The notes beneath the pieces are model-generated. The model saw nothing but the letters and a program-made list of their open reading frames with translations, ran no database searches and was not told the origin of the DNA. A stretch of 64,000 nucleotides of DNA from Dendrobates tinctorius. Lineage: Eukaryota. Where the stretch lies: assembly GCF_039654945.1 (NCBI RefSeq), contig NW_027361687.1, forward strand, positions 62,372,001 through 62,436,000. The letters are read 5' to 3'. Below, one piece after another: positions 12,736-64,000 of the stretch. Made by a program: the position numbers and the translations under genes. Positions within the stretch are counted from its first letter, which is position 1. Each line of letters opens with the position of its first letter.

Positions 12736-14130
12736 AATATAGCTGTAGGGTGGGCCTCTAGAGTCAATTCCTCCTGTGGGCCCCAGACGCCCCTGTGGTT
12801 ATGCGTTTTCTGCAGTGTCACCTCTCCACGTGCTGACAGCTAGGACATAATGCAATGACTGTGGGTGAACTGAGGTGTGGCGACCGTGCCCTGTGGTTTA
12901 CCTTCCCGAGCCATGTGAGCGCAGAGCAGTAATAACCCCGGGGCATCAGAGTCTAATAAAGTAATAACCTTTCTGGCAATGCTCTGCATGCCCCAACACC
13001 ATCCTGGCACAACCCTGACACCTTTCTGTTGATGATCTGCCCATCCCTGACACCGTTCTGGCTCAACCCCCATGCTCCCGGACACCTTTCTGGCATAGGT
13101 CTGCACACACTAAGACAAGCCTGACGCTCCCCGACACCTTTGTGGAGCAGTTGCGACTCCAATTTAGAAATATTTACAGAATAAGTCCGGTAAATCTGAA
13201 TGCAGTTTTCACTAATTTGCAATATCCACGTTTCACCAGTAGAGGTTGCTGTTTACTATAGAAATCCTGGCTAGATATCTGCTTCTAAACTAATTGACAC
13301 AATGACATCTACTGGACATACAGTGAAATTGCATTTAAATAACATTGTTGGTTATTCTCCTTATTAGTCACTGGAACAAACACTTTGTGGACATTTATAG
13401 GTTTTCTTTTTCTACATAATTAATCACGCCAATAAGAATATTAAGGAAAAAAAGTGATGTATTTTTGTACAAACAGTAAGCAATGAATAGCCGGTTTTCA
13501 CTTATAAATCATTTTTCATAGATTTTCCAAACTGCATATTGATAAAACCAGATTAAACACGTGGCCATGGGCAGATCGGGACGGTACATGTTTCACAATG
13601 GGGCCAGGATCTCCAAACTTCGCTTATATTCACCTTAAATTGCTTTTTCCGCTCTAGGAGGCTGATTCTCTTAGAGGAGATCAGTCTGGGGCTGGGGGTC
13701 TTCCAAGCAATGCTTCCTGGGAAAAATCAGCTCCCCTCCAGATAGAGGAAACCTTTTCTCCAGCCCCACCAGTGGGTTGTACTAGAGACAGTTTTCTTTC
13801 TATAGGTGGCACCAGATACATTTTTTCCTCTAGGTGGCTCTAGAGACAGTTTTCTTCCTTCTGGAGGAGAGCATATTTGTAAGCTTCTAGAATAAAATTC
13901 TGGAACATCTCGGAAGAGATCAAAACCAAACTTGTGACCAAAGATCAAACTTTACAAAGCTGTTGCAGCTCTTAGGTGTTGAGGACCGAGTCTGGACAGG
14001 GTCCATCAGGCCAGTCCTTCATATTTCTGATCAGTCACCTCCTCCACGAGTTCGCCTTCTTCAGTCTTCCTTCTAGGTGACCCAGAAGGCTCTGTAACTT
14101 CTCCTACGATCTGGGATGGACTGGTCATGC

Positions 14131-36858: not shown

Positions 36859-38491
<1,633 letters not shown>

Positions 38492-48474: not shown

Positions 48475-50845
48475 TTATACCAGAGGGCACTCCTGGTGGG
48501 ATCTGGATAGGTCGTTGGTATAGGGGGCGCTCCTGGTGGGATCTGAATAGGTCGGTGGTATAGGGGCCGCTCCTGGAGGGATGTGGATAGGTTGGTGGTA
48601 TTGGGGCCGCTCCTGGTGGGATCTGGATAGGTTGGTGGTATTGGGGGCGCTCCTGGTGGGATCTGGATAGGTTGGTGGTATAGGGGCCACTCCTGGAGGG
48701 ATGTGGATAGGTTGGTGGTATTGGGGCCGCTCCTGGTGGGATCTGGATAGGTTGGTGGGATCTGGATAGTTCGGTGGTATAGAAGCCGCTCCTGGTGGGA
48801 TCGGGTTAGGTTGGTGGTATTGGGGCTGCTCCTGGTGGGATCTGGATAGGTTGGTGGTATAGGGGGACCTCCTGGTGGGATCTGGAAAGGAGGGTAATAT
48901 AGGGGGCGCTCCTGGTGGGATCTGGATAGGTTGGTGGTATAGGGGGCGCTCCTGGTGGGATCTGGATAGGTCGGTGGTATAGGGGGCACTCCTGGTGGGA
49001 TCCGGATAGGTCGGTGGTATAGGGCGCGTTCCTGGTGGGATCCGGATAGGTCGGTGGTATAGGGCGCGTTCCTGGTGGGATCCGGATAGGTCGGTGGTAT
49101 TGGGGGCGCTCCTGGTGGGATCCGGATAGGTTGGTGGTATTGGGGGGCTCTCCAGGTGGGATCCGGATAGGTTGGTGGTATTGGGGGGCGCTCCAGGTGG
49201 GATCCGGATAGGTCGGTGGTATTGGGGGCGCTCCAGGTGGGATCCGGATAGGTCGGTGGTATAGGGTGCGCTCCTGGTGGGATCTGGATAGGTTGTTGGT
49301 ATAGGGGGCTCTCCTGGTGGGATCTGGATAGGTTGGTGGTATAGGGTGCGCTCCTGGTGGGATCTGGATAGGTCGTTGGTATATGGGGCTCTCCTGGTGG
49401 GATCTGGATAGGTCGGTGGTATAGGGGGTGCTCCTGGTGGGATCTAGATAGGTCGGTGGTATAGGGGGTGCTTCTGGTGGGATCTGGATAGGTCGGTGGT
49501 ATAGGGAGCTCTCCTGGTGGGATCTGGATAGGTCGGTGGTATAGGGTGCGCTCCTGGTGGGATCTGGATAGGTCGGTGGTATAGGGGGCGCTCCTAGTGG
49601 GATCTGGATAGGATGTTGGTATAGGAGGTGCTCCTGGTGGGATCTGGATAGGTCGGTGGTATAGAGGGTGCTCCTGGTGGGATCTGGATAGGTCGGTTGT
49701 ATAGGGGGCGCTCCTGGTGGGATCTGGATAGGTCGTGGTATAGGAGGCTCTCCTGGTGGGATCTGGATAGGTTGTTGGTATAGGAGGCGCTCCCGGTGGG
49801 CTCTGGATAGGTCGTTGGTATATGGGGCGCTCCTGGTGGGATCTGGATAGGTCATTGGTATAGGGGGCGCTCCTGGTGGGATCTGGATAGGTCGGTGGTA
49901 TAGGGTGCGCTCCTGGTGGGATCTGGATAGGTCAGTGGTATAGCGTGCGCTCCTGGTGGGATCTGGATAGGTCATTGGTATAGGAGGCGCTCCTGGTGGG
50001 ATCTGGATAGGTCATTGGTATAGGAGGCGCTCCTGGTGGGATCTGGATAGGTCTGTGTTATAGGGGGCGCTCCTGGTGGGATCTGGATAGGTCGGTGGTA
50101 TAGGGGGCGCTCCTGGTGGGATCTGGATAGGTCGGTGGTATAGGGTGCGCTCCTGGTGGGATCTGGATAGGTCTGTGTTATAGGGGGCGCTCCTGGTGGG
50201 ATCTGGATAGGTCGGTGGTATAGGGTGCGCTCCTGGTGGGATCTGGATAGGTCTGTGGTATAGGGGGCGCTCCTGGTGGGATCTGGATAGGTCGGTGGTA
50301 TAGGGGGCGCTCCTGGTGGGATCTGGATAGGTCGGTGGTATAGGGGGCGCTCCTAGTGGGATCTGGATAGGTCTGTGGTATAGGGGGCGCTCCTGGTGGG
50401 ATCTGGATAGGTCGGTGGTATAGGGGGCGCTCCTGGTGGGATCTGGATAGGTCATTGGTATAGGGGGCGCTCCTGGTGGGATCTGGATAGGTCATTGGTA
50501 TAGGGGGCGCTCCTGGTGGGATCTGGATAGGTCATTGGTATAGGGCGAACTCCTGGTGGGATCTGGATAGGTCTGTGTTATAGGGGGTGCTCCTGGTGGG
50601 ATCTGGATAGGTCGGTGGTAAAGGGGGAGCTCCTGGTGGGATCTGGATAGGTCATTGGTATAGGGGGCGCTCCTGGTGGGATCTGGATAGGTCATTGGTA
50701 TAGGGGGAACTCCTGGTGGGATCTGGATAGGTCTGTGTTATAGGGGGTGCTCCTGGTGGGATCTGGATAGATCGGTGGTATAGGGGGAGCTCCTGGTGGG
50801 ATCTGGATAGGTCATTGGTATAGGGGGCGCTCCTGGTGGGATCTG
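48475..50845. repeat. 40-bp G-rich minisatellite in lamtor2 intron 1
   Basis: Unit CTCCTGGTGGGATCTGGATAGGTCGGTGGTATAGGGGGCG. Confidence 0.95.
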
Positions 50846-51034: not shown

Positions 51035-51594
51035 AATAATCTTCCTGCAGCAGGTCCACACGACGAACAGCCTCACAAGTACCAGCGGTCATGTGGCGAG
51101 CCAAACCCCTGCCCCTGCATTGCATGCTGGGAAATGCAGTCCGGAATCAGGAATTTATTTTTGGTTTGATAATTTAGCTCAAGTATCAGTTTATAAAACA
51201 TAAACCTTAAACATTTTAATGAAGTCATTAGAATAACATCATTTTGAAGCTCAGCGATTGGAATAAACTGCTAGAAAGTTGTGTAGCCCTGGTAACGGTC
51301 CAAGCCCTGCGTATCAAGCCTCGTTTACGTTTATACATTTCAACTATAGCTTTGATTGGTTGGAGACTTTCGTACGTTCCAAGGAGCTGAGTCTTGATTG
51401 GAGAGCTTGAATCAGCTGGTCGCGGGAATGACGCAGCATCATTCGTCTGAGCTGGGTCCCCCGCACCGCCAGATGGCGATGGAGAGTCTGGTAACTAAAA
51501 CAAAGCACGGAGTTGTCTGTGTCGCGGTAGCCGGCTACACTTCTCTTTTTTTTTTGCTCCTCCTCGGGGTGGGCGGGTGCACACAAGATGGCGG
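51035..51594. promoter_or_regulatory. Bidirectional lamtor2/ubqln4 promoter
   Basis: ~550 bp between the divergent ATGs, CpG-rich. ATTGG boxes at ~51355 and ~51397, GC box at 51571, YY1 motif CAAGATGGCGG at 51584-51594. Confidence 0.75.
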
Positions 51595-51725
51595 AGAGCG
51601 GCGCTGACGGTGCAGCCTCCGGTAACCCCGGACAGGCGCCGGGTAAAGGCTTTATTCGGGTCACAGTGAAGACACCCAAGGACAAGGAGGAGATCGTGAT
51701 CGGAGAGACGGCGTGTGTGCGGGAG
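51588..51725 (+). CDS. ubqln4: Ubiquilin-4 coding exon 1 (MAES..IRVTVKTPKDKEEIVIGETACVRE); later exons lie beyond the window
   Basis: The start of the UBL domain matches human UBQLN4 IRVTVKTPKDKEEIVI. Phase-0 donor GAG|GTGAG. Synteny with lamtor2 and rab25 supports the call. Confidence 0.9.
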
Positions 51726-54276
51726 GTGAGCGGGCTGCATTGTGGGAGATGGCGCTCAAACTGCACAGGTCACATGTGCCGTACTGCCCCGATTTAGGTG
51801 TATGGAGGAGGGGAGGACCGAGCAGAATAGTGAGTGCAGCTCTGGGGTATAATACAGGATGTAACTCAGGATCAGTAATGTAATGTATGTACACAGTGAC
51901 TGCACCAGCAGAATAGTGAGTGCAGCTCTGGGGTATAATACAGGATGTAACTCAGGATCAGTAATGTAATGTATGTACACAGTGACTGCACCAGCAGAAT
52001 AGTGAGCGCAGCTCTGGGGTATAGTACAGGATGTAACTCAGGATCAGTACAGGATCAGTAATGTATGTACACAGTGATTGCACCAGCAGAATAGTGAGTG
52101 CAGCTCTGGGGTATAATACAGGATGTAGCTCAGGATCGGTACAGGATCAGTAATGTAATGTATGTACACAGTGACTGCACCAGCAGAATAGTGAGTGCAG
52201 CTCTGGGGTATAATACAGGATGTAACTCAGGATCAGTAATGTAATGTATGTACACTGTGACTGCACCAGCAGAATAGTGAGTGCAGCTCTGGGGTATAAT
52301 ACAGGATGTAACTCAGGATCAGTACAGGATCAGTAATGTAATGTATGTACACAGTGACTGCACCAGCAGAATAGTGAGTGCAGCTCTGGAGTATAATACA
52401 GGATGTAACTCAGGATCAGTACAGGATCAGTAATGTATGTACACAGTGACTGCACCAGCAGAATAGTGAGTGCAGCTCTGGAGTATAATACAGGATGTAA
52501 CTCAGGATCAGTAATGTATGTACACAGTGACTGCACCAGCAGAATAGTGAGTGCAGCTCTGGAGTATAATACAGGATGTAACTCAGGATCAGTAATGTAT
52601 GTACACAGTGACTGCACCAGCAGAATAGTGAGTGCAGCTCTGGGGTATAGTACAGGATGTAACTCAGGATCAGTAATGTAATGTATGTACACAGTGACTG
52701 CACCAGCAGAATAGTGAGTGCAGCTCTGGAGTATAATACAGGATGTAACTCAGGATCAGTAATGTAATGTATGTACACAGTGACTGCACCAGCAGAATAG
52801 TGAGTGCAGCTCTGGGGTATAGTACAGGATGTAACTCAGGATCAGTACAGGATCAGTAATGTATGTACACAGTGACTGCACCAGCAGAATAGTGAGTGGA
52901 GCTCTGAGGTATAATACAGAATGTAACCCAGGATCAGTAATGTATGTACACAGTGACTGCACCAGCAGAATAGTGAGTGCAGCTCTGAGGTATAATACAG
53001 AATGTAACCCAGGATCAGTAATGTATGTACACAGTGACTGCACCAGCAGAATAGTGAGTGCAGCTCTGAGGTATAATACAGAATGTAACCCAGGATCAGT
53101 AATGTAATGTATGTACATAGTGACTGCACCAGCAGAATAGTGAGTGCAGCTCTGGGGTATAATACAGGATGTAACTCAGGATTAGTACAGGATCAGTAAT
53201 GTAATGTATGTACACAGTGATTGCACCAGCAGAATAGTGAGTGCAGCTCTAGAGTATAATACAGGATGTAACTCAGGATCAGTAATGTATGTACACAGTG
53301 ACTGCACCAGCAGAATAGTGAGTGCAGCTCTGGAGTATAATACAGGATATAACTCAGGATTAGTACAGGATCAGTAACGTAATGTATGTACACAGTGACT
53401 GCACCAGCAGAATAGTGAGTGCAGCTCTGCAGTATAATACAGGATCAGTAATGTAATGTATGTACACAGTGACTGCACCAGCAGAATAGTGAGTGCAGCT
53501 CTGGAGTATAATACAGAATGTAACCCAGGATCAGTAATGTATGTACACAGTGATTACACCAGCAGAATAGTGAGTGCAGCTCTGGGGTATAATACAGGAT
53601 GTAACTCAGGATTAGTACAGCATCAGTAATGTAATGTATGTACACAGTGATTGCACCAGCAGAATAGTGAGTGCAGCTCTGGAGTTTAATACAGGATGTA
53701 ACTCAGGATTAGTACAGGATCAGTAATGTAATGTATGTACACAGTGATTGCACCAGCAGAATAGTGAGTGCAGCTCTGGAGTATAATACAGGATGTAACT
53801 CAGGATTAGTACAGGATCAGTAATGTAATGTATGTACACAGTGATTGCACCAGCAGAATAGTGAGTGCAGCTCTGGAGTTTAATACAGGATGTAACTCGG
53901 GATCAGTAATGTAATGTATGTACACAGTGACTGCACCAGCAGAATAGTGAGCGCAGCTCTGGGGTATAATACAGGATGTAACTCAGGATTAGTACAGGAT
54001 CAGTAATGTAATGTATGTACACAGTGATTGCACCAGCAGAATAGTGAGTGCAGCTCTGGAGTTTAATACAGGATGTAACTCGGGATCAGTAATGTAATGT
54101 ATGTACACAGTGATTGCACCAGCAGAATAGTGAGTGCAGCTCTGGAGTATAATACAGGATGTACCTCATGATCAGTAATGTAATGTATGTACACAGTGAC
54201 TGCACCAGCAGAATAGTGAGTGCAGCTCTGGGGTATAATACAGGATGTAACTCAGGATCAGTACAGGATCAGTAAT

Positions 54277-56597
54277 GAATCATAGAATCGTAGAGTTGGA
54301 AGGGACCTCCTGGGCCATCTGGTCCAACCCCCTGCTCAAAGCAGGATTCGCTAAATCATACCAGTCAGATGTCTGTCCAGCCTCTGTTTGAAGACTTCCA
54401 TTGAAGGAGAACTCACCACTTCTCGTGGCAGCCTGTTCCACTCATTGATCACTCTAACTCTCAAAAAGTTTTTTTCTAATATCTAATCTGTGTCTCCTCC
54501 CATTCAGTTTCATCCCATTGCTTCTAGTCTTTCCTTGTGCAAATGAGAATAAAGTTGATCCTTCTACAATGTGACAGCCCTTGAGATATTTGTAGACAGC
54601 TATTAAGTCTCCTCTCAATCTTCTCTTTTGCAAACTAAACATTCCCAAATCCTGCAACCTTTCCTCATAAGACAGGGTTTGCAGACCGGTCACCATTCTG
54701 GTCGCTCTTTTCTGAACTTGCTCCAGTTTGTTGATGTCTTTTTTAAAATGTGGTGCCCAAAACTGGACACAATATTCCAGATGAGGTCTGACCAAAGAGG
54801 AGTAGAGGGAAATAATGACTTCACGTGATCTAGACTGTATGCTTCTGTTAATACATCCTAGAATTGCATTTGCCTTTTTTGCTGCTGCATCACACTGTTG
54901 ACTCGTATTCAGTCTGTGATCTATTAGTATACCCAAGTCTTTTTCACATGTGCTGTTGCTTAGCCCTATTCCTCCCATTCGGTATATGCTTTTTTCATTT
55001 TTATTGCCCAGATGTAGTACTTTGCATTTCTCCCTGTTACAAACCATTCTGTTAGTTGCTGCCCACTTCTCCAGTTTATTTAAATCTTTTTGAATCCTCT
55101 CTCTCTCTTCTCTAGTATTAGCTATCCCTCCTAGCTTTGTGTCATCAGCAAATTTAATCAGTTTACCCTCAATTCCTTCATCTAAATCGTTGATAAATAT
55201 GTTGAACAATACAGGGCCCAGGACAGAGCCCTGTGGTACCCCACTTGAGACATTCCTCCAACTGGATGTGCAGCCATTTACGACCACTCTTTGGGTCCGA
55301 TCACTAAGCCAGTTATGAATCCACCTAACAGTTGCCTTGTCCATTCCATACTTAGTCATTTTTTCAATAAGGATTGTATGAGAGACTTTGTCAAATGCTT
55401 TGCTGAAGTCAAGATATACTATATCTACAGCATTTCCCTGATCCACCCAATCAGTGATTCCGTCATAGAAGGAAATTAAGTTAGTCTGACATGACTTATT
55501 AGTTACAAACCCATGCTGACTCTGTTTAATCACTTCATTCTTATCCAGGTATTGACATACATGTTTAATAATTTGTTCAAAGATCTTTCCTGGTATAGAA
55601 GTCAGACTCACCGGCCTATAGTTGCCTGGGTCCACCTTCTTCCCCTTTTTGAAGATAGGAACAACATTTGCTCTTCTCCAGTCTTCTGGCACTTCTCCTG
55701 TTCTCCAAGAATTTTCAAAGATTATGGAGAGGGGTTCAAAAATTTCTTCTGCTATCTCCTTCAGTACTCTGGGGTGTAATTCATCTGGACCTGGAGACTT
55801 GAATTCATTTAGGTTAGCTAAGTGTTTCCTCACTATCTTTCTGTTTATAGATATCCTGGATTCTTCTATTCCCTTAATAGGACAGTGAATAACAGTTGAT
55901 GTTACATTTCCTTTCTGAGAGAAAACAGATGCAAAATAGGAATTTAAAAGTTCAGCCTTCTCAACATCCTGTCTTACCATTTCATCATTTTCATCCTGTA
56001 AAAACCCTATAGCATCTTTGACTTTTCTTTTACTTTTGACATATCCCCAAAATCCTTTATAATTGCTTTTGACATCTCTTGCAAGCCTCAATTCATTTTC
56101 AGCTTTAGATAATCTGATTTGTGCCCTGCAGGTTCTGCAGACAGCATTATATTCTTCTTTAGATATGCCTCCCTCTTTCCATTTTATAAACATTTCTTTC
56201 TTCCTTTTTAGCATGTGCTTAAGTTCTGTGTTCATCCATCCTGGTTTCTTTAAATGCTTCCTATTCTTCCCTCTTTTCGGAATTGTTAACAACTGTGCTT
56301 TGAGAATTTCATTTTTCAAGATTTCCCATCCTTCCTGGACATTTTTGTCTTTAAGGATATCCAGCCATTGGATCCCTCCAATTCTCTTTCTGAATCCCTT
56401 AAAATCTGCCTTTCTGAAATCTAACCTTGACGTCTGAGTCTTCACAGGTCTTCCGCCTCTAGTTATCCAAAATTCTAAAATAGCATGGTCGCTACCTCCT
56501 AGGGTCCCAGCCACTTTTACCTCCTCAACCATTTCCTCCCTGTTTATAAGGATTAGATCCAAGGTAGCAGTTCCCCTTGTTTTCTCCCTTACCTTTT
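54277..56597 (-). mobile_element. CR1 LINE, 5'-truncated, young
   Basis: Open for ~715 codons from the EN C-terminus (LDLIL..SDH) through RT (NYRPVSLT, YLDFSKAFD, GVPQGS, FADD). The 3' tail has ATTCTATG-type repeats at 54277-54292. Confidence 0.95.
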
Positions 56598-57315
56598 GTA
56601 TGTAATGTATGTACACAGTGACTGCACCGGCAGAATAGTGAGTGCAGCTCTGGAGAATAATACAGGATGTAACGCAGGATCAGTAATGTAATGTATGTAC
56701 ACAGTGATTGCACCAGCAGAATAGTGAGTGTAGCTCTGGGGTATAGTACAGGATGTAACTCAGGATCAGTACAGGATCAGTAATGTAATGTATGTACACA
56801 GTGACTGCACCAGCAGAATAGTGAGTGCAGCTCTGGAGTATAATACAGGATGTAACTCATGATCAGTAATGTAATGTATGTACACAGTGACTACACCAGC
56901 AGAATAGTGAGTGCAGCTCTGGGGTATAATACAGGATGTAACTCAGGATCAGTAATGTATGTACACAGTGACTGCACCAGCAGAATAGTGAGTGCACCTC
57001 TGGGGTATAATACAAGATATAACTCAGGATCAGTACAGTATCAGTAATGTATGTACACAGTGACTGCACCAGCAGAATAGTGAGTGCAGATCTGGAGTAT
57101 AATACAGGATGTAACTCAGGATCAGTAATGTAATGTATGTACACAGTGACTGCACCAGCAGAATAGTGAGTGCAGCTCTGGAGTATAATACTGGATATAA
57201 CTCAGGATTAGTACAGGATCAGTAATGTATGTACACAGTGACTGCACCAGCAGAATAGTGAGTGCAGCTCTGGAGTATAATACAGGATGTAACTCAGGAT
57301 CAGTAATGTAATGTA

Positions 57316-58964
57316 CAGTCATATGGTAAAGTTTGGGCACCCCTATTAATGTTAACCTTTTTTCTTTATAACAATTTTGTTTTTTGCAACAGCTTTTTCA
57401 GTTTCATATATCTAATAACTTATGGACTCAGTTATATTTCTGGATTCAAATGAGGTTTATTGCACTACCAGAAAATGTGCAATCTGCATTTAAACAAAAT
57501 TTGACCGATGCAAAAGTATGGGCACCCTTATCATTTTCTTGATTTGAACACTCCTAACTACTTTTTACTGACTTCCTGAAGCACTAAATTGGTTTTGTAA
57601 CCTCATTGAGCTTTGAACTTCATAGCCAGGTGTATCAAATCATGAGAAAAGGTATTTAAGGTGGCCACTTGCAAGTAGTTCTCCTATTTGATTCTCCTAT
57701 GAAGAGTGGCATCATGGGCTCCTCAAAATAACTCTCAAATGATCTGAAAACAAAGATTATTCAACATAGCTTTTCAGGGGAAGGATACAAAAAGTTGTCT
57801 CAGAGATTTAACCAGTCAGTTTCCACTGTGAGGAACATAGTAAGGAAATGGAAGAACACAGGTACAGTTCTTGTTAAGTCCAAAAGTGGCAGGCCAAGAA
57901 AAATATCAGAAAGGCAGAGAAGAAGAATGGTGAGAACAGTCAAGCACAATCCACAGACCACCTCCAAAGACCTGCAGCATCATCTTGCTGCAGATGGTGT
58001 CACTGTGCATCGGTCAACAATACAGCGCACTTTGCACAAGGAGAAGCTGTATGGGAGAGTGATGCGAAAGAAGCCGTTTCTGCAAGCACACCACAAACAG
58101 AGTCGCCTGAGGTCTTCAAAAGCACATTTGGACAAGCCAGTTACATTTTGGAAGAAGGTCCTGAGGACTGATAAAACAAAGATTGAGTTGTTTGGTCATA
58201 CAAAAAAGCGTTATGCATGGAGGCTAAAAAACACAGCATTCCAAGAAAAACACTTGCTACCCACAGTAAAATTTGGTGGAGGTTCCATCATGCTTTGGGG
58301 CTGTGTGGCCAATGCCGGCACCAGGAATCTTGTTAAAGTTGAGGGTCGCATGGATTCAACTCAGTATCAGCAGATTCTTGACAATAATGTGCAAGAATCA
58401 GTGACGAAGTTGAAGTTACGCAGGGGATGGATATTTCAGCAAGACAATGATCCAAAACACCGCTCCAAATCTACTCAGGCATTCATGCAGAGGAACAATT
58501 ACAATGTTCTGGAATGGCCATCCCAGTCCCCAGACCTGAATATCATTGAACATCTGTGGGATGATTTGAAGCGGGCTGTCCATGCTCGGCGACCATCAAA
58601 CTTAACTGAACTGGAATTGTTTTGTAAACAGGAATGGTCACAAATACCTTCATCCAGGATCCAGGAACTCATTAATAGCTACAGGAAGCGACTAGAGGCT
58701 GTTATTTTTGCAAAAGGAGGATCTACGAAATATTAATGTCACTTTTATGTTGAGGTGCCCATACTTTTGCACTGGTAAAATTTTGTTTAAATGCAGATTG
58801 CACATTTTCTGTTAGTACAATAAACCTCATTTGAATCCAGAAATATAACTAAGTCCATCAGTTATTAGATATATGAAACTGAAATAGCTGTTGCAAAAAC
58901 CAAAATTGTTATAAAGAAAAAAGGTTAACATTAATAGGGGTGCCCAAACTTTTACATATGACTG
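57316..58964 (+). mobile_element. Tc1 DNA transposon, full length, DD34E transposase with premature stop
   Basis: ~210 bp TIRs CAGTCATATG.. / ..CATATGACTG with TA TSD. ATG at 57714 has TAA at codon 6 (57729-57731); the same frame then stays open to 58736. Confidence 0.93.
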
Positions 58965-61702
58965 TATGTACACAGTGATTGCATCAGCAGAATAGTGAGT
59001 GCAGCTCTGGGGTATAATACAGGATGTTACTCAGGATCAGTAATGTATGTACACAGTGAGTGCAGCTCTGGGGTATAATACAGGATGTAACTCAGGATCA
59101 GTACAGGATCAGTAATGTATGTACACAGTGACTGCACCAGCAGAATAGTGAGTGCAGCTCTGGGGTATAATACGGGATGTAACTCAGGATCAGTAATGTA
59201 TGTACACAGTGACTGCACCAGCAGAATAGTGAGTGCAGCTCTGGGGTATAATACAAGATGTAACTCAGGATCAGTACAGTATCAGTAATGTAATGTATGT
59301 ACACAGTGACTGCACCAGCAGAATAGTGAGTGCAGCTCTGGGGTATAATACAGGATGTAACTCAGGATCAGTACAGGATCAGTAATGTATGTACACAGTG
59401 ACTGCACCAGCAGAATAGTGAGTGCAGCTATGGAGTATAATATAGAATGTAACTCAGGATCAGTAATGTAATGTATGTACACAGTGACTGCACCAGCAGA
59501 ATAGTGAGTGCAGCTCTGGGGTATAATACAGGATGTAACTCAGGATCAGTACAGCATCAGTAATGTGTGTACACAGTGACTGCACCAGCAGAATAGTGAG
59601 TGCAGCTCTGGGGTATAATACAGGATGTAACTCAGGATCAGTAATGTGTGCACACAGTGACTGCACCAGCAGAATAGTGAGTGCAGCTCTGGGGTATAAT
59701 ACAGGATGTAACTCAGGATCAGTACAGGATCAGTAATGTGTGTACACAGTGACTGCACCAGCAGAATAGTGAGTGCAGCTCTGGGGTATAATACAGGATG
59801 TAACTCAGGATCAGTAATGTAATGTGTGCACACAGTGACTGCACCAGCAGAATAGTGAGTGCAACTCTGGGGTATAATACAGGATGTAACTCTGGATCAA
59901 TACAGGATCAGTAATGTATGTACACAGTGACTGCACCAGCAGAATAGTGAGTGCAGCTCTGGGGTATAATACAGGATGTAACTCAGGATCAGTACAGGAT
60001 CAGTAATGTATGTACACAGTGACTGCACCAGCAGAATAGTGAGTGCAGCTATGGAGTATAATATAGAATGTAACTCAGGATCAGTAATGTAATGTATGTA
60101 CACAGTGACTGCACCAGCAGAATAGTGAGTGCAGATCTGGAGTATAATGCAGGATGTAACTCAGGATCAGTAATGTAATGTGTGCACACAGTGACTGCAC
60201 CAGCAGAATAGTGAGTGCAGCTCTGGGGTATAATACAGGATGTAACTCAGGATCAGTACATTATCAGTAATGTGTGTACACAGTGACTGCACCAGCAGAA
60301 TAGTGAGTGCAGCTCTGGGGTATAATACAGGATGTAACTCAGGATCAGTAATGTAATGTGTGCACACAGTGACTGCACCAGCAGAATAGTGAGTGCAGCT
60401 CTGGGGTATAATACAGGATGTAACTCAGGATCAGTACAGTATCAGTAATGTAATGTATGTACACAGTGACTGCACCAGCAGAATAGTGAGTGCAGCTCTG
60501 GGGTATAATACAGGATGTAACTCAGGATCAGTACAGGATCAGTAATGTATGTACACAGTGACTGCACCAGCAGAATAGTGAGTGCAGCTCTGGGGTATAA
60601 TACAGGATGTAACTCAGGATCAGTAATGTAATGTATGTACACAGTGACTGCACCAGCAGAATAGTGAGTGCAGCTCTGGGGTATAATACAGGATGTAACT
60701 CAGGATCAGTACAGGATCAGTAATGTAATGTATGTACACAGTGACTGTACCAGCAGAATAGTGAGTGCAGCTCTGGGGTATAATACAGGATGTAACTCTG
60801 GATCAATACAGGATCAGTAATGTAATGTATGTACACAGTGATTGCACCAGCAGAATAGTGAGTGCAGCTCTGGGGTATAATACAGGATGTAACTCAGGAT
60901 CAATACAGGATCAGTAATGTAATGTATGTACACAGTGACTGCACCAGCAGAATAGTGAGTGCAACTCTGGGGTATAATACAGGATGTAACTCTGGATCAA
61001 TACAGGATCAGTAATGTAATGTATGTACACAGTGACTGCACCAGCAGAATAGTGAGTGCAGCTCTGGAGTATAATACAGGATGTACCTCCTGATCAGTAA
61101 TGTAATGTATGTACACAGTGACTGCACCAGCAGAATAGTGAGTGCAGCTCTGGAGTATAATACAGGATGTAACTCAGGATCAGTAATGTATGTACACAGT
61201 GACTGCACCAGCAGAATAGTGAGTGCAGCTCTGGAGTATAATACTGGACATAACTCAGGATTAGTACAGGATCAGTAATGTATGTACACAGTGACTGCAC
61301 CAGCAGAATAGTGAGTGTAGCTCTGGAGTATAATACAGGATGTAACTCAGGATCAGTACAGGATCAGTAATGTATGTACACAGTGATTGCACCAGCAGAA
61401 TAGTGAGTGCAGCTCTGGGGTATAATACAGGATGTAACTCGGGATCAGTAATGTATGTACATAGTGAGTGCAGCTCTGGGGTATAATACAGGATGTAACT
61501 CAGGATCAGTAATGTATGTACACAGTGACTGCACCAGCAGAATAGTGAGTGTAGCTCTGGAGTATAATACAGGATGTAACTCAGGATCAGTACAGGATCA
61601 GTAATGTACAGTATGTACACAGTGACTGCACCAGCAGAATAGTGAGTGCAGCTCTGGAGTATAATACAGGATGTAACTCAGGATCAGTACAGGATCAGTA
61701 AT

Positions 61703-61928
61703 CACAGTGATCAGTGATCACAGCCAAACCAGATCTCCCACTTTGCACTGATGAGGGGCAGTACCCCAAAACACAGTGTCTGCAAATGGAGATTCTGTCT
61801 TGGCTTTTATCCTAAGTCATGTAACTAGTCTCGTTAAAGGGTCAACATTGACTTTTAGGATTGCTACTCCAATAGGTGGCACTAGAGTTCTAGTCCTCTT
61901 CCTCTCTGAAGAGACAATTTGCATAATT
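61703..61928 (+). mobile_element. Retrozyme-like (hammerhead-containing) short insertion with 12-bp TSD
   Basis: A non-array segment flanked by AGGATCAGTAAT (61691-61702 and 61929-61940). Contains a hammerhead fold, a CTCF motif and an octamer. Confidence 0.75.
61722..61805 (+). ncRNA. Type I hammerhead ribozyme fold with extended stem I (G12A variant)
   Basis: TTTGCA-CTGATGA-GGGG-CAGTA-CCCC-aAAA-CACAGT-GTC-TGCAAA. Stem I extends through TCTCC/GGAGA, CAGA/TCTG and AGCCAA/TTGGCT. Confidence 0.8.
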
Positions 61929-64000
61929 AGGATCAGTAATGTAATGTATGTACACAGTGACTGCACCAGCAGAATAGTGAGTGCAGCTATGGAGTATAAT
62001 ACAGGATGTAACTCAGGATCAGTACAGGATCAGTTATGTATGTACACAGAGACTGCACCAGCAGAATAGTGAGCGCAGCTCTGGGGTATAATACAGGATA
62101 TAACTCAGGATCAGTAATGTATGTACACAGTGACTGCACCAGCAGAATAGTGAGCGCAGCTCTGGGGTATAATACAGGATGTAACTCAGGATTAGTAATG
62201 TAATGTATGTACACAGTGACTGCACCAGCAGATTAGTGAGTGCAGCTCTGGGGTATAATACAGGATGTAACTCAGGATCAGTAATGTATGTACAGAGTGA
62301 CTGCACCAGCAGAATGAGTGCAGCTCTGGAGTATAATACAGGATGTAACTCAGGATTAGTAATGTATGTACACAGTGATTGCACCAGCAGACTAGTGAGT
62401 GCAGCTCTGGAGTATAATAAAGGATATAACTCATGATCAGTACAGGATATGTAATGTATGTACACAGTGACTGCACCAGCAGAATAGTGAGTGTATCTCT
62501 GGAGTATAATGCAGGATATAACTCAGGATCAGTACAGGATCAGTAATGTATGTACACAGTGACTCCACCAGCAGAATAGTGAGTGCAGCTCTGGGGTATA
62601 ATACAGGATGTAACTCAGGATCAGTACAGGATCAGTAATGTAATGTATGTACACAGTGATTGCACCAGCAGAATAGTGAGTGCAGCTCTGGGGTATAATA
62701 CAGTATGTAACTCAGGATTAGTACAGGATGTAATGTATGTACAGAGTGACTGCACCAGCAGAATAGTGAGTGCAGCTCTGGAGTATAATACAGGATGTAA
62801 CTCAGGATTAGTAATGTATGTACACAGTGACTGCACCAGCAGACTAGTGAGTGCAGCTCTGGAGTATAATACAGGATATAACTCATGATCAGTAATGTAA
62901 TGTATGTACACAGTGTCTGCACCAGCAGAATAGTGAGTGCAGCTCTGGAGTATAATACAGGATGTAACTCAGGATTAGTAATGTATGTACACAGTGACTG
63001 CACCAGTAGAATAGTGAGTGCAGCTCTGGAGTATAATACAGGATGTAACTCAGGATTAGTAATGTATGTACACAGTGACTGCACCATCAGAATTGTGAGT
63101 GCAGCTCTGGGTTATGATACAGGATGTAACTCAGGATAAGTACAGGATCAGTAATGTATGTACACAGTGACTCCACCCGCAGAATAGTGATTGTAGCTCT
63201 GGGGTGTAATACAGGATGTAACTCAGGATTTGTACAGGATCAGTAATGTATGTACACAGTGACTGCACCATGAGAATAGTGAGTGCAGCTCTGGAGTACA
63301 ATATAGGATGTATCTCAGGATCAGTAATGTATGTACAGAGTGACTGCACCAGCAGAATAGTGAGTGCAGCTCTGGTGTATAATAAAGGATGTACCTCAGG
63401 ATCAGTAATGTAATGTGTGCACACAGTGAGTGCACCAGTAGAATAGTGAGTGCAGCTCTGGAGTATAATACAAGATGTGATTCAGGATCAGTATTGTAAT
63501 GTACACAGTGAGTGCAGCGCTGGAGTATAATACATAAGTAATGTTTGTGAGGTCTCCTCAGTGTATGCAGACCATATATTGCAGTGGTGATGGTGTTGTA
63601 ACATTTGGCATTCTCTGCTACTTGGGATATGTTTGATCCCCTGCTGCTTGTTGTGCCTTCCCCACTGATCTGTGTCACCATTGTGTAACTGTCTGATTAC
63701 CAAACACTGCCGCCCCCCTTGTTCCCATCTTGTCCTGGCTGCTGTAATGTGGCTTAATCCTTGCAATACGAAGTTTTTTGCGTTAGTCCTGCACCATTTT
63801 CTAGATATGTTTGTGGTCTGTGATTTGACCTATTGTATTTACATCCAGAGAGCTCCTGCCCTGCACTTCTCAGCTGAGAGTTTGCCACAGTTGTCAATCC
63901 TTCATTTGGCAGCGCAGAACTGCGTATTCCTAGATGGTTTCTTTCATTGTGTCAGCATGGAGAGGACTGTAGCGAACCCTCAGCTGCTCAGAGTATTGGC

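What the first reader, a model, noticed from the sequence alone, without database searches (positions are those of the whole stretch)
61703..61928. Frog retrozyme-like element: hammerhead ribozyme + CTCF motif + octamer in one ~226 bp mobile unit
Seen: a unique segment interrupts the ubqln4 intron array with an apparent 12-bp duplication (AGGATCAGTAAT). It folds into a type I hammerhead: CTGATGA at 61748-61754, stem II GGGG/CCCC, a tiny near-palindromic stem III ACAC-A-GTGT, a GUC cleavage site ending at 61780, and a long bulged stem I (61722-61747 with 61781-61805). It also carries CCAATAGGTGGCAC (CTCF consensus, 61869-61882) and ends in ATTTGCAT (octamer, 61917-61924). Established: newt satellite-2 and non-LTR retrozymes are short hammerhead repeats; satellite-2 transcription uses snRNA-type promoter elements including an octamer; such elements are proposed to be mobilised by Penelope-like elements. 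Inference: this is a dispersed monomer of an anuran retrozyme family that could spread CTCF/Oct sites and, in tandem form, give self-cleaved or circular RNAs. It lies in the sense orientation of ubqln4 pre-mRNA.
Basis: partly seen in the sequence, partly recalled or inferred. Interest (0 to 1): 0.85.

Follow-up and report, generated by a model that had tools for sequence, protein, structure and literature searches.

The report
Dead copy of frog hammerhead retrozyme
This is one worn-out copy of a very abundant short frog jumping repeat whose family consensus carries a self-cutting hammerhead RNA motif; such repeats (non-LTR retrozymes) are already described in amphibians, frogs included, so it is real but ordinary.

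Summary
A 226-bp unique insert (61703-61928) interrupts an 81-97-bp tandem array in intron 1 of a ubiquilin gene, in the sense orientation. It is flanked by a genuine 12-bp target-site duplication. All the reported motifs are at the stated coordinates.

Three corrections are needed:
- This copy has A, not G, at hammerhead core position G12 (61768), so it should be catalytically dead. No Rfam hammerhead model detects it.
- Only about 61721-61925/61929 belongs to the repeat family. The first 18 nt are junction filler.
- The copy is a lone monomer with a weak helix III.

Contigs from public runs of four organisms show that the family is extremely abundant (more than 12,000 contigs laid in each of three runs, 1,427 in the smallest). 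In 85-90% of depth position 61768 is G, which restores the canonical core. The only common polymorphism inside the conserved core is at the free position N7. The majority letters also repair the distal part of helix I. Copies share a fixed 3' end but have variable 5' ends, and head-to-tail joints exist.

This fits a non-LTR retrozyme, probably mobilised by Penelope-like elements, which is a known class. The CTCF-like site and the octamer are conserved in the family, but binding is untested. The scan has noted this kind of element repeatedly elsewhere in this genome.

The parts
61691..61702 (.). Left copy of the 12-bp target-site duplication AGGATCAGTAAT.
   Evidence: The single-12-mer empty-site model is found at paralogous array units. 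Two abutting 12-mers are never found.
61703..61720 (+). 18-nt 5' junction filler (CACAGTGATCAGTGATCA). It is not family sequence and is partly array-like.
   Evidence: depth collapses to about 1-3% of the hammerhead region's in bin 61710-61719, and the longest contig pieces start at 61721 or later. CACAGTGAT occurs 15 times in the window. TRF reports a 16-nt period across 61689-61723.
61721..61928 (+). Family-homologous retrozyme unit (about 205-209 nt). It is non-coding, has GC 0.43, and differs from the majority letters at 5 to 6 positions: 61768, 61788, 61798, 61826, 61829, with 61799 borderline.
   Evidence: contig pieces span 61721 to 61925/61929; loose ends lie behind 61923, 61925 and 61929..
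61722..61747 (+). Hammerhead helix I, 5' strand. The proximal 6 bp are 61742-47, then an internal loop, then the distal helix.
   Evidence: Folds. No variant at 5% or more in the family.
61748..61754 (+). Core C3-U4-G5-A6-N7-G8-A9 (CUGAUGA).
   Evidence: Position 61752 (N7) is U/C polymorphic in the family, and the other six positions are invariant at the 5% level.
61755..61767 (+). Helix II, GGGG/CCCC with loop CAGUA (G10.1-C11.1 present).
61768..61770 (+). Core G12-A13-A14, which reads AAA in this copy (G12 to A). The family majority reads GAA.
   Evidence: 61768 A>G holds 0.89, 0.90, 0.88 and 0.85 of depth in the four runs. C61767 with the consensus G61768 forms a CpG.
61771..61779 (+). Helix III, near-palindromic ACACAGUGU (A15.1-U16.1, C-G, A-U, with a 3-nt loop). 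It is weak as a monomer and self-complementary for dimer formation.
   Evidence: self-duplex -7.0 kcal/mol. The architecture matches the canonical metazoan type I hammerhead described in PMC4209133.
61780..61780 (+). C17. The predicted cleavage lies 3' of GUC.
   Evidence: Inferred from hammerhead numbering.
61781..61805 (+). Helix I, 3' strand. This copy carries two pair-breaking departures (61798, 61799) from the majority.
61869..61883 (+). CTCF-like motif CCAATAGGTGGCACT, matching 14 of 15 positions of CCASYAGRKGGCRSY.
   Evidence: one of 3 matches with at most 1 mismatch in the 64-kb window. Conserved in the family. Binding not tested.
61917..61924 (+). Octamer ATTTGCAT at the extreme 3' end of the unit.
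   Evidence: the only + strand copy in the window. No variant at 5% or more in the family.
61929..61940 (.). Right copy of the 12-bp target-site duplication.
51588..51725 (+). Context: exon 1 of the host ubiquilin gene. The element lies in intron 1 in the sense orientation.
   Evidence: matches the ubiquitin-like domain starts of ubiquilin 3, 2 and 1. The paralogue number 4 was not tested.

Best explanation
The insert is one dispersed, full-length but decayed monomer of a very abundant, non-coding retroelement family of about 205-209 nt. The family's master copies encode a canonical metazoan type I hammerhead ribozyme, so it is a non-LTR retrozyme.

Shown here:
- The family exists in runs labelled as four organisms.
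- Its majority sequence has the complete hammerhead core and helices.
- Its copies share a fixed 3' end just after the octamer (61923-61929) and have variable 5' ends.
- Head-to-tail arrangements occur.
- This copy has a 12-bp TSD plus 18 nt of 5' junction filler.

Inferred from the literature:
- Tandem master loci are transcribed.
- Paired hammerheads form an extended intermolecular helix III through the palindromic ACACAGUGU and cut out unit-length RNAs, which a host ligase circularises.
- A Penelope-like element's reverse transcriptase and GIY-YIG endonuclease nicks a target and starts cDNA synthesis at an internal site of the RNA, here just 3' of the octamer. It often stops early, which gives 5'-truncated monomers with TSDs of variable length.

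This copy is inert for three reasons. G12 became A (CpG decay), two distal helix I pairs are broken, and no partner hammerhead is nearby. It should therefore not cut the ubiquilin pre-mRNA in which it lies in the sense orientation.
For: - Motif and coordinates.
- Chance expectation: under 1 in 300 windows, even with position 12 left free.
- Family abundance: 12,932, 12,555, 1,427 and 17,349 contigs laid in runs of organisms A, B, D and E.
- Core restored by the majority: G at 61768 holds 85-90% of depth.
- Core polymorphism: the only polymorphism inside the conserved core nucleotides is at 61752, the free position N7. The other two variable sites in the ribozyme block are 61761 (loop II) and 61767 (C11.1, 6-9%, CpG).
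- Helix I: the majority G at 61798 and T at 61799 restore a perfect AGCCAAACCAG/CTGGTTTGGCT distal helix.
- Insertion signature: pieces start at 61721 to 61741 but end at 61921 to 61929. There are hundreds of loose ends with dissimilar flanks behind 61925, and joints from 61929 back to 61721 in 7 contigs of 3 runs.
- Species-specific subfamily letters: for example, 61823 G holds 97% of depth in organism E and 12% in organisms A and B.
- TSD.
- Fold: a hammerhead-constrained fold is feasible at -33.5 kcal/mol against an MFE of -37.8. The unit folded as a circle has z = -3.3 and 62% of bases paired.
- Architecture: a 6-bp proximal helix I, a 4-bp helix II and a short palindromic helix III match the 'canonical metazoan HHR' of PMC4209133.
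- Class features: low GC, TSDs longer than 4 bp and units of 170-400 nt match PMC7229834.
- Precedent in frogs: retrozyme families related to PLE pLTRs are described in the bioRxiv preprint 10.64898/2026.07.22.740005.
- Precedent for the 3' end: internal RT initiation by a PLE is shown in PMC11167929.
Against: - No Rfam hammerhead model scores this copy, even at E<=10 on 71 nt.
- No compensatory covariation was seen in the stems. They are simply conserved, and one common variant (61798 A) breaks a distal pair.
- The evidence from other copies comes from short assembled contigs, not from full copies I could align.
- The spacer in the head-to-tail joints is unknown, so the unit could be longer. 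Earlier notes on this genome describe 317-331-nt units.
- No Penelope-like element is in the window. The reverse transcriptases here are CR1/LINE-like and Gypsy-like.
- No run that holds the element is confirmed as RNA.
- The predicted MFE sequesters part of the core (GCACUG with CAGUGU).
Confidence: 0.85

Rival explanations
1. The insert is a solo pseudo-LTR, or a fragment of an autonomous Penelope-like element, and not a copy of a separate non-autonomous retrozyme family. The hammerhead would then be the PLE's own pLTR ribozyme.
For: About 40% of contigs reaching the 3' end continue past 61929 into a semi-conserved sequence (ATTTCCCAGAGGAGCATTGCATGGC...). This could be PLE internal sequence. 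PLE pLTRs carry type I hammerheads and are sister to frog retrozyme families. PLE insertions have variable TSDs and end extensions.
Against: PLE hammerheads in metazoa are mostly 'minimal' variants with a long helix II and little or no helix III. This one has the canonical retrozyme-type architecture. Hundreds of contigs end at 61923-61925 with unrelated flanks, as expected of a short dispersed unit. The continuation sequence is absent from the window, and no PLE ORF is nearby.
Confidence: 0.1
2. The hammerhead resemblance is a coincidence within an ordinary SINE- or MITE-like repeat, and no ribozyme is involved.
For: There is no Rfam hit, no covariation, and this copy lacks G12. The helix III and cleavage-site segment ACACAGTGTCTGCA resembles the host array's ACACAGTGACTGCA.
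Against: The descriptor gave 0 hits in 300 simulated windows. The family majority supplies the missing G12, and core variation falls on the one free core position. Array contigs cannot explain this: they would give T at 61768 and A at 61779, and neither is seen. No tRNA-like head is present and there are no terminal inverted repeats.
Confidence: 0.03
3. The copy has been co-opted by the host. It might act as a CTCF and Oct-1 binding element in ubiquilin intron 1, or as a residual intronic ribozyme that modulates the pre-mRNA.
For: It lies in the sense orientation in intron 1. The CTCF-like site matches 14 of 15 positions, and the exact octamer is retained in this copy and conserved in the family.
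Against: G12A should abolish catalysis. The motifs are present in essentially every copy of an extremely abundant repeat, so their presence here says nothing about this locus. The copy sits inside a fast-evolving tandem array and shows ordinary decay of about 2.5-3% from the majority. No contig in the four runs was seen to bridge the array-insert junction, so conservation of this insertion across species cannot be judged.
Confidence: 0.02

Closest known systems
Non-LTR retrozymes of amphibians: newt and salamander satellite 2, axolotl Rtz331 and Rtz353 (Cervera & de la Pena 2020, PMC7229834), and Xenopus retrozyme families (Li, Clavereau & Pollet 2026, bioRxiv 10.64898/2026.07.22.740005)
   Same: It is a short non-coding unit with GC below 50%. 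It carries a type I hammerhead with a 6-bp proximal helix I, a 4-bp helix II and a weak palindromic helix III that implies action as a dimer. Copy number is very high. Monomers are dispersed and head-to-tail copies also occur. TSDs are longer than 4 bp. About 42-44% of Xenopus copies lie in introns.
   Different: At about 205-209 nt the unit is shorter than the amphibian mean (316 bp) and the roughly 330-nt salamander units. The consensus helix I continues into a 16-bp distal helix. The exact hammerhead sequence was not found in the searchable literature text. Dispersed copies share a fixed 3' end just after an octamer and do not end at the ribozyme cut site. This copy is catalytically dead (G12A). 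RNA circles and self-cleavage were not tested here.
Penelope-like element pLTR hammerheads (Cervera & de la Pena 2014, PMC4209133; Frangieh et al. 2024, PMC11167929)
   Same: Both have a type I hammerhead in a repeat unit, variable-length TSDs, tandem or partial-tandem insertions, and junction extensions. The 3' ends of insertions are set by an internal reverse-transcription start, not by ribozyme cleavage.
   Different: No RT or GIY-YIG ORF is attached. The hammerhead is the canonical form and not the 'minimal' PLE form. The 18-nt extra segment lies at the 5' junction and is array-like, whereas the PLE tail is a 30-40-bp piece of element sequence.
CTCF-site-bearing SINEs, such as mouse B2 (recalled from established knowledge, not tested)
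   Same: An abundant short retroelement has a conserved CTCF-like motif in every copy.
   Different: There is no pol III tRNA-like head. The motif has one mismatch at an informative position. No binding data exist.

Membership tests
Hammerhead ribozyme, type I | Core C3 U4 G5 A6 N7 G8 A9 | tested here: met
   CUGAUGA lies at 61748-61754. In the family only N7 (61752) varies at 5% or more.
Hammerhead ribozyme, type I | Core G12 A13 A14 | tested here: not met
   The window copy reads AAA at 61768-70. The family majority reads GAA, with G holding 85-90% of depth in 4 runs. The family therefore meets this feature and this copy does not.
Hammerhead ribozyme, type I | Helix II closed by G10.1-C11.1; A15.1-U16.1 pair; H17 (not G) at the cut site; helix I formed by the sequence 5' of the core and 3' of H17 (open helix I defines type I) | tested here: met
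   GGGG/CCCC is present, A61771 pairs with U61779, and position 61780 is C (GUC). The 6-bp proximal helix I is UUUGCA/UGCAAA, followed by a distal helix. The descriptor gave 0 hits in 300 simulated windows.
Hammerhead ribozyme, type I | Score against the curated covariance models (Rfam Hammerhead_1, HH9 and others) | tested here: not met
   No hammerhead hit at the gathering threshold or at E<=10 on 451 nt and on 71 nt. The tool cannot be given a copy with G12, so the family itself was not scored.
Hammerhead ribozyme, type I | Compensatory covariation in the helices | tested here: inconclusive
   The helices are conserved, not covarying. The variant table from the contigs shows no double changes, and full copies were not available to align.
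Hammerhead ribozyme, type I | Site-specific self-cleavage | not testable with these tools
   This needs in vitro transcription of natural intact monomer and dimer copies.
Non-LTR retrozyme | Short (about 170-400 nt) non-coding unit, without LTR, PBS or PPT, carrying a type I hammerhead; GC below 50% | tested here: met
   The unit spans 61721-61925/61929, has GC 0.43 and no ORF.
Non-LTR retrozyme | Multicopy, with tandem (head-to-tail) arrangements | tested here: inconclusive
   Multicopy status is clearly met. Joints from 61929 back to 61721 occur in 7 contigs of 3 runs, but the letters between the two sides are unknown. The copy in the window is a monomer.
Non-LTR retrozyme | Insertion with a TSD longer than 4 bp | tested here: met
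   The TSD is 12 bp, supported by paralogous empty sites.
Non-LTR retrozyme | Expressed as linear and circular unit-length RNAs | not tested
   No run holding it is on record as RNA. X12 is only guessed to be RNA.
Non-LTR retrozyme | Sequence relationship to, or mobilisation by, a Penelope-like element | not testable with these tools
   The window holds no PLE and no frog genome collection is searchable here. A fixed 3' end with variable 5' truncation is consistent with target-primed reverse transcription.
Pol III SINE (tRNA, 5S or 7SL head) | tRNA-, 5S- or 7SL-derived 5' head | tested here: not met
   ARAGORN finds no gene and there are no Rfam matches.
CTCF binding site | Match to the core consensus and occupancy by CTCF | tested here: inconclusive
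   The site matches 14 of 15 positions of CCASYAGRKGGCRSY, a consensus recalled from knowledge. I calculate a chance of about 0.002 for such a match in 226 bp. Occupancy cannot be tested here.

The most novel reading that the evidence does not exclude
The conserved 3' block of this retrozyme family (a CTCF-like site, a pyrimidine-rich stretch and an octamer) is functional. The octamer would be part of an internal snRNA-type promoter that lets tandem copies transcribe themselves, as reported for newt satellite 2. The CTCF-like site would be bound in vivo. A ribozyme-bearing retroelement would then have seeded very many CTCF sites across anuran genomes, much as B2 SINEs did in mouse.
Probability: 0.12. 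Interest if true: 0.6.

Novelty: new member of a known kind. Interest (0 to 1): 0.22.

Why it matters
The copy itself matters little. It is one dead monomer of a repeat class already documented in salamanders and frogs.

It has modest value in three ways:
- It shows that a hand-found hammerhead missed by every Rfam model can be validated from the letters of its sister copies. Curated models may therefore undercount this family.
- The family's dispersed copies end at a fixed site just after an octamer and not at the ribozyme cut site. This fits the internal reverse-transcription start recently shown for a Penelope-like element and bears on how retrozymes are mobilised.
- Every copy carries a conserved CTCF-like motif, which makes a genome-wide CTCF-occupancy test in this frog worthwhile.

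Tried and rejected
- Rfam: searches at the gathering threshold on the whole window and at E<=10 on 451 nt and 71 nt gave no hammerhead hit. I treat this as a limit of the models for this mutated, short-helix-III copy and not as a refutation.
- Other copies in the window: none. There is only a weak 52-nt resemblance at 13831-13879, and Rfam found nothing there.
- Natural intact copies: exact-pattern scans of the metagenome and viral contig collections with the majority-letter core gave 0 hits. No frog genome collection is available, so I could make no full alignment, covariance model or copy count.
- Scan's earlier findings, searched by sequence: blank.
- Partner element in the window: the 720-aa RT ORF at 54454-56616 is LINE-type, with a CR1-like 3' end by my recall, and shares nothing with the insert.
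- SINE reading: no tRNA-like head.
- Literature: a full-text search for the hammerhead sequence found 0 papers. The supplements of the Xenopus retrozyme preprint do not hold it. The newt promoter paper (PMC308520) is not held.
- Energy of the double-hammerhead conformation: ViennaRNA could not evaluate the crossing intermolecular structure. Only the helix III self-duplex (-7.0 kcal/mol) is reported.
- Conservation contrast: the hammerhead block against the middle of the unit is not significant (4/45 against 13/63 variable sites, p=0.12). It is significant only when pooled with the 3' block (p=0.02). An earlier Fisher test used wrong counts and is disregarded.
- Summed contig depth was not converted into a copy number, as the tool warns against this.
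- For the folding, a script placed the four majority letters into the 86-nt ribozyme domain of this non-coding frog repeat. No consensus of the whole unit was built.

Full report
**1. The observation**

Reading 61400-62300 shows an 81-97-bp tandem array, which TRF reports over 51821-63516. A 226-bp segment (61703-61928) interrupts it and has no other copy in the window (blastn).

The segment is flanked by AGGATCAGTAAT at 61691-61702 and at 61929-61940. The 12-mer occurs 63 times in the array, so I tested whether the duplication is real. A reconstructed empty site holding one 12-mer occurs exactly elsewhere in the array: the 52-nt version at 52311 and 56758, and the 33-nt version 8 times. Two abutting 12-mers never occur. 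The duplication is therefore a genuine target-site duplication.

- CTGATGA at 61748-54.
- GGGG-CAGTA-CCCC at 61755-67.
- ACACAGTGT at 61771-79.
- C at 61780.
- Complementary helix I strands at 61722-47 and 61781-805.
- CCAATAGGTGGCAC at 61869-82.
- ATTTGCAT at 61917-24.

A ubiquilin first exon (MAESG...IRVTVKTPKDKEEIVI, followed by a GTGAGT donor) lies at 51588-51725 on the + strand. It matches the ubiquitin-like domain starts of ubiquilins 3, 2 and 1. The insert is therefore in intron 1 and in the sense orientation. The label 'ubqln4' fits my recollection of that paralogue's N-terminus but was not tested.

**2. Is the hammerhead more than chance?**

I wrote a descriptor with these parts:
- CUGANGA.
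- A helix II of at least 4 bp closed by G-C.
- Any base followed by AA.
- A15.1 to U16.1 with at least 3 bp.
- A non-G at position 17.
- Five contiguous helix I pairs.

It hits the 64-kb window once, here. It hit none of 300 second-order Markov simulations of the window. The region folds better than shuffles (z = -3.5).

Two things count against the hammerhead reading:
- Position 61768, where the invariant G12 belongs, is A.
- No Rfam hammerhead model reports the site. This holds at the gathering threshold on the whole window and at E<=10 on 451 nt or 71 nt.

**3. Evidence from sister copies**

The 226 bp shares sampled 31-mers with 22 public runs, labelled with several different organisms, from 11 studies. 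I laid the Logan contigs of four runs (organisms A, B, D and E) on 61670-61960 at 80% likeness or more. The results were:

- Abundance. 12,932, 12,555, 1,427 and 17,349 contigs lie on the stretch. This is a very abundant repeat, not a unique sequence.
- G12. At 61768 the other copies read G in 89%, 90%, 88% and 85% of depth. The family majority is therefore ...CCCC-GAA-ACAC..., a complete hammerhead core. In the majority sequence C61767-G61768 is a CpG, so the A in this copy looks like ordinary methyl-CpG decay. The minor C>T at 61767 (6-9%) is the same decay on the other strand.
- Core polymorphism. Within the conserved core nucleotides, the only site that varies in 5% or more of depth is 61752 (U/C; C at 18-69%). 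This is N7, the one core position that is free in hammerheads.
- Helix I. The majority G at 61798 and T at 61799 turn the interrupted distal stem of this copy into a perfect AGCCAAACCAG/CTGGTTTGGCT duplex. With the four majority letters, helix I becomes 6 proximal pairs, an internal loop, and a 16-bp distal helix with one bulge.
- Array contamination. Contigs from the array cannot explain these letters. Aligned on the shared ACACAGTG they would give T at 61768 and A at 61779, and neither appears.

What I did not find is compensatory covariation. The stems are conserved and do not covary. One common variant (61798 A, 19-45%) breaks a distal pair.

Variable sites are sparser in the ribozyme block (4 of 45) and in the 3' block (5 of 57) than in the middle (13 of 63). 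The contrast is significant only when the two blocks are pooled (p = 0.02). For the hammerhead block alone p = 0.12.

**4. Anatomy of the element as a mobile unit**

- 5' boundary. Depth collapses in bin 61710-61719, to about 1-3% of the level over the hammerhead. The longest pieces begin at 61721, 61722, 61725, 61726, 61729, 61730 and so on to 61741. Some of these lie inside long contigs that continue into unrelated sequence. The first 18 nt of the insert (61703-61720) are therefore not family sequence. They are partly array-like: CACAGTGAT occurs 15 times in the window, and TRF sees a 16-nt period over 61689-61723. I read them as 5' junction filler.
- 3' boundary. Pieces end at 61921-61929. 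Hundreds of contigs per run go on behind 61923 or 61925 into dissimilar, AT-rich sequence (consensus agreement about 0.4).
- Continuation. A second class (about 250-330 contigs per DNA run) continues behind 61929 into a semi-conserved sequence. That sequence is absent from the window.
- Tandem copies. Joints from 61929 back to 61721 occur in 7 contigs of 3 runs, so head-to-tail copies exist. The letters between the two sides are not known.
- Subfamilies. Letters specific to one organism (61823 G at 97% in organism E against 12% in organisms A and B; 61825 G only in B; 61854/55 G only in E) indicate amplification after these lineages separated.

A fixed 3' end, variable 5' truncation and a 12-bp TSD are the signature of target-primed reverse transcription. 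The unit is non-coding and has GC 0.43. Folded as a circle it has z = -3.3 against shuffles, with 62% of bases paired. It has no tRNA-like head.

**5. How it most likely works**

The consensus ribozyme has a 6-bp proximal helix I followed by an internal loop, a 4-bp helix II, and a very short helix III whose sequence ACACAGUGU is a near-palindrome. This is the architecture Cervera and de la Pena describe for canonical metazoan type I hammerheads. They describe these as poorly active alone and as cleaving as dimers in tandem transcripts (PMC4209133; PMC7229834). The helix III segment can self-pair at -7.0 kcal/mol. As a monomer the predicted MFE sequesters part of the core, and the hammerhead-constrained fold costs about 4 kcal/mol more.

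By inference from those papers:
- Tandem master copies are transcribed.
- Paired hammerheads release unit-length RNAs, which a host ligase circularises.
- A Penelope-like element's enzyme makes the cDNA copies.

The family's shared 3' end lies just after the octamer and not at the ribozyme cut site. Part of the family reads on beyond it. This fits the internal start of reverse transcription shown for an Anolis PLE, where hammerhead cleavage was not needed for insertion in vitro (PMC11167929). The variable TSD fits the PLE endonuclease (PMC8557442). None of these steps was shown here, and the window holds no PLE. Its reverse transcriptases are a LINE with a CR1-like 3' end at 54278-56616 and Gypsy-type elements.

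This copy should be inert. It has A at G12, two broken distal pairs, and no neighbouring partner. It differs from the majority at 5 to 6 of about 205 positions. A dead ribozyme in the sense orientation in an intron is unremarkable. In Xenopus, 42-44% of retrozyme copies are intronic, although they are depleted there relative to intergenic DNA.

**6. CTCF-like site and octamer**

CCAATAGGTGGCACT matches 14 of 15 positions of the CTCF core consensus CCASYAGRKGGCRSY, which I recalled from knowledge. Only three matches with at most one mismatch occur in the window. I calculate a chance of about 0.002 for such a match in 226 bp. The exact octamer is the only + strand copy in the window.

Both motifs lie in the conserved 3' block of the family. 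They were therefore carried by the master copies and not acquired at this locus. That newt satellite 2 uses an snRNA-type promoter is recorded in the literature (Coats et al. 1994, as cited in PMC2220036). The original paper was not available. Whether CTCF or Oct factors bind these copies cannot be tested here. A 3' block conserved for recognition by the reverse transcriptase would explain the conservation equally well.

**7. Comparison with what is known, and novelty**

Non-LTR retrozymes with type I hammerheads are established in salamanders (PMC7229834). A 2026 preprint reports them in all seven amphibian genomes sampled. It describes 57 Xenopus families related to PLE pseudo-LTRs and shows one dimer cleaving in vitro (bioRxiv 10.64898/2026.07.22.740005).

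The present family is a further member of that kind. It is shorter than the amphibian average, has a long distal helix I and a conserved 3' block, and its hammerhead sequence did not appear in the searchable literature text.

The scan itself has already noted this kind of unit many times elsewhere in this genome. These include dispersed units of about 184-220 bp and units of 317-331 nt with octamer and CTCF-like motifs. At least one follow-up reached the same verdict for a 318-nt family. I did not see those sequences, so identity of the families is unverified.

**8. Verdict**

The element is a new member of a known kind, and interest is low (0.22). The most novel reading still open is that the conserved 3' block is a working promoter plus a CTCF site spread genome-wide by a ribozyme-bearing retroelement (probability about 0.12).

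Noticed in passing
window 51821-63516: An 81-97-bp tandem array fills at least 11.7 kb of ubiquilin intron 1. Its unit is itself an extremely abundant repeat: summed contig depth on the array flanks equals or exceeds that of the retrozyme in all four runs. Its segment ACACAGTGACTGCA differs by one base from the retrozyme's helix III and cut-site segment ACACAGTGTCTGCA. This is probably a coincidence.
   Followed up: partly
window 54278-56616 (-): A 5'-truncated LINE is inserted in the same array. It has a 720-aa ORF with an RVT_1 domain, closest to L1 ORF2 and R2 structures, and a 3' end (GGGTTGGACCAGATGGCCCAGGAGGTCCCTTCCAAC...) that I recall as CR1-like.
   Followed up: partly
window 57795-58736 (+) and 37193-38272 (+): Two Tc1/mariner-type transposase ORFs (HTH_Tnp_Tc3_2 and DDE_3 domains). 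The first lies in a gap of the intronic array.
   Followed up: no
window 50000-50845: A GC-rich 40-bp minisatellite (21 copies, 93% matches) lies about 740 bp upstream of the ubiquilin start codon. TRF was run only from 50000, so its left end was not determined.
   Followed up: no
window 13740-13880: Three closely spaced modules of the form (C/A)TAGGTGGC(A/T)C(C/T)AGA, followed by a pyrimidine-rich stretch, resemble the retrozyme's CTCF-like 3' block (79% over 52 nt). No ribozyme-like Rfam match is nearby. This may be the 3' block of a related family.
   Followed up: partly
window 35261 (-): An exact match to the CTCF core consensus (CCACTAGGGGGCGCT) lies inside the region another note calls Gypsy element B.
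   Followed up: no
window 61670-61960, run X12 (organism D): In X12, which is only guessed to be RNA, the retrozyme-to-array depth ratio is about 0.02-0.03, against 0.3-0.4 in the three DNA runs. Either copy numbers differ in that species or the array is far more represented than the retrozyme in RNA. This is not resolved.
   Followed up: no
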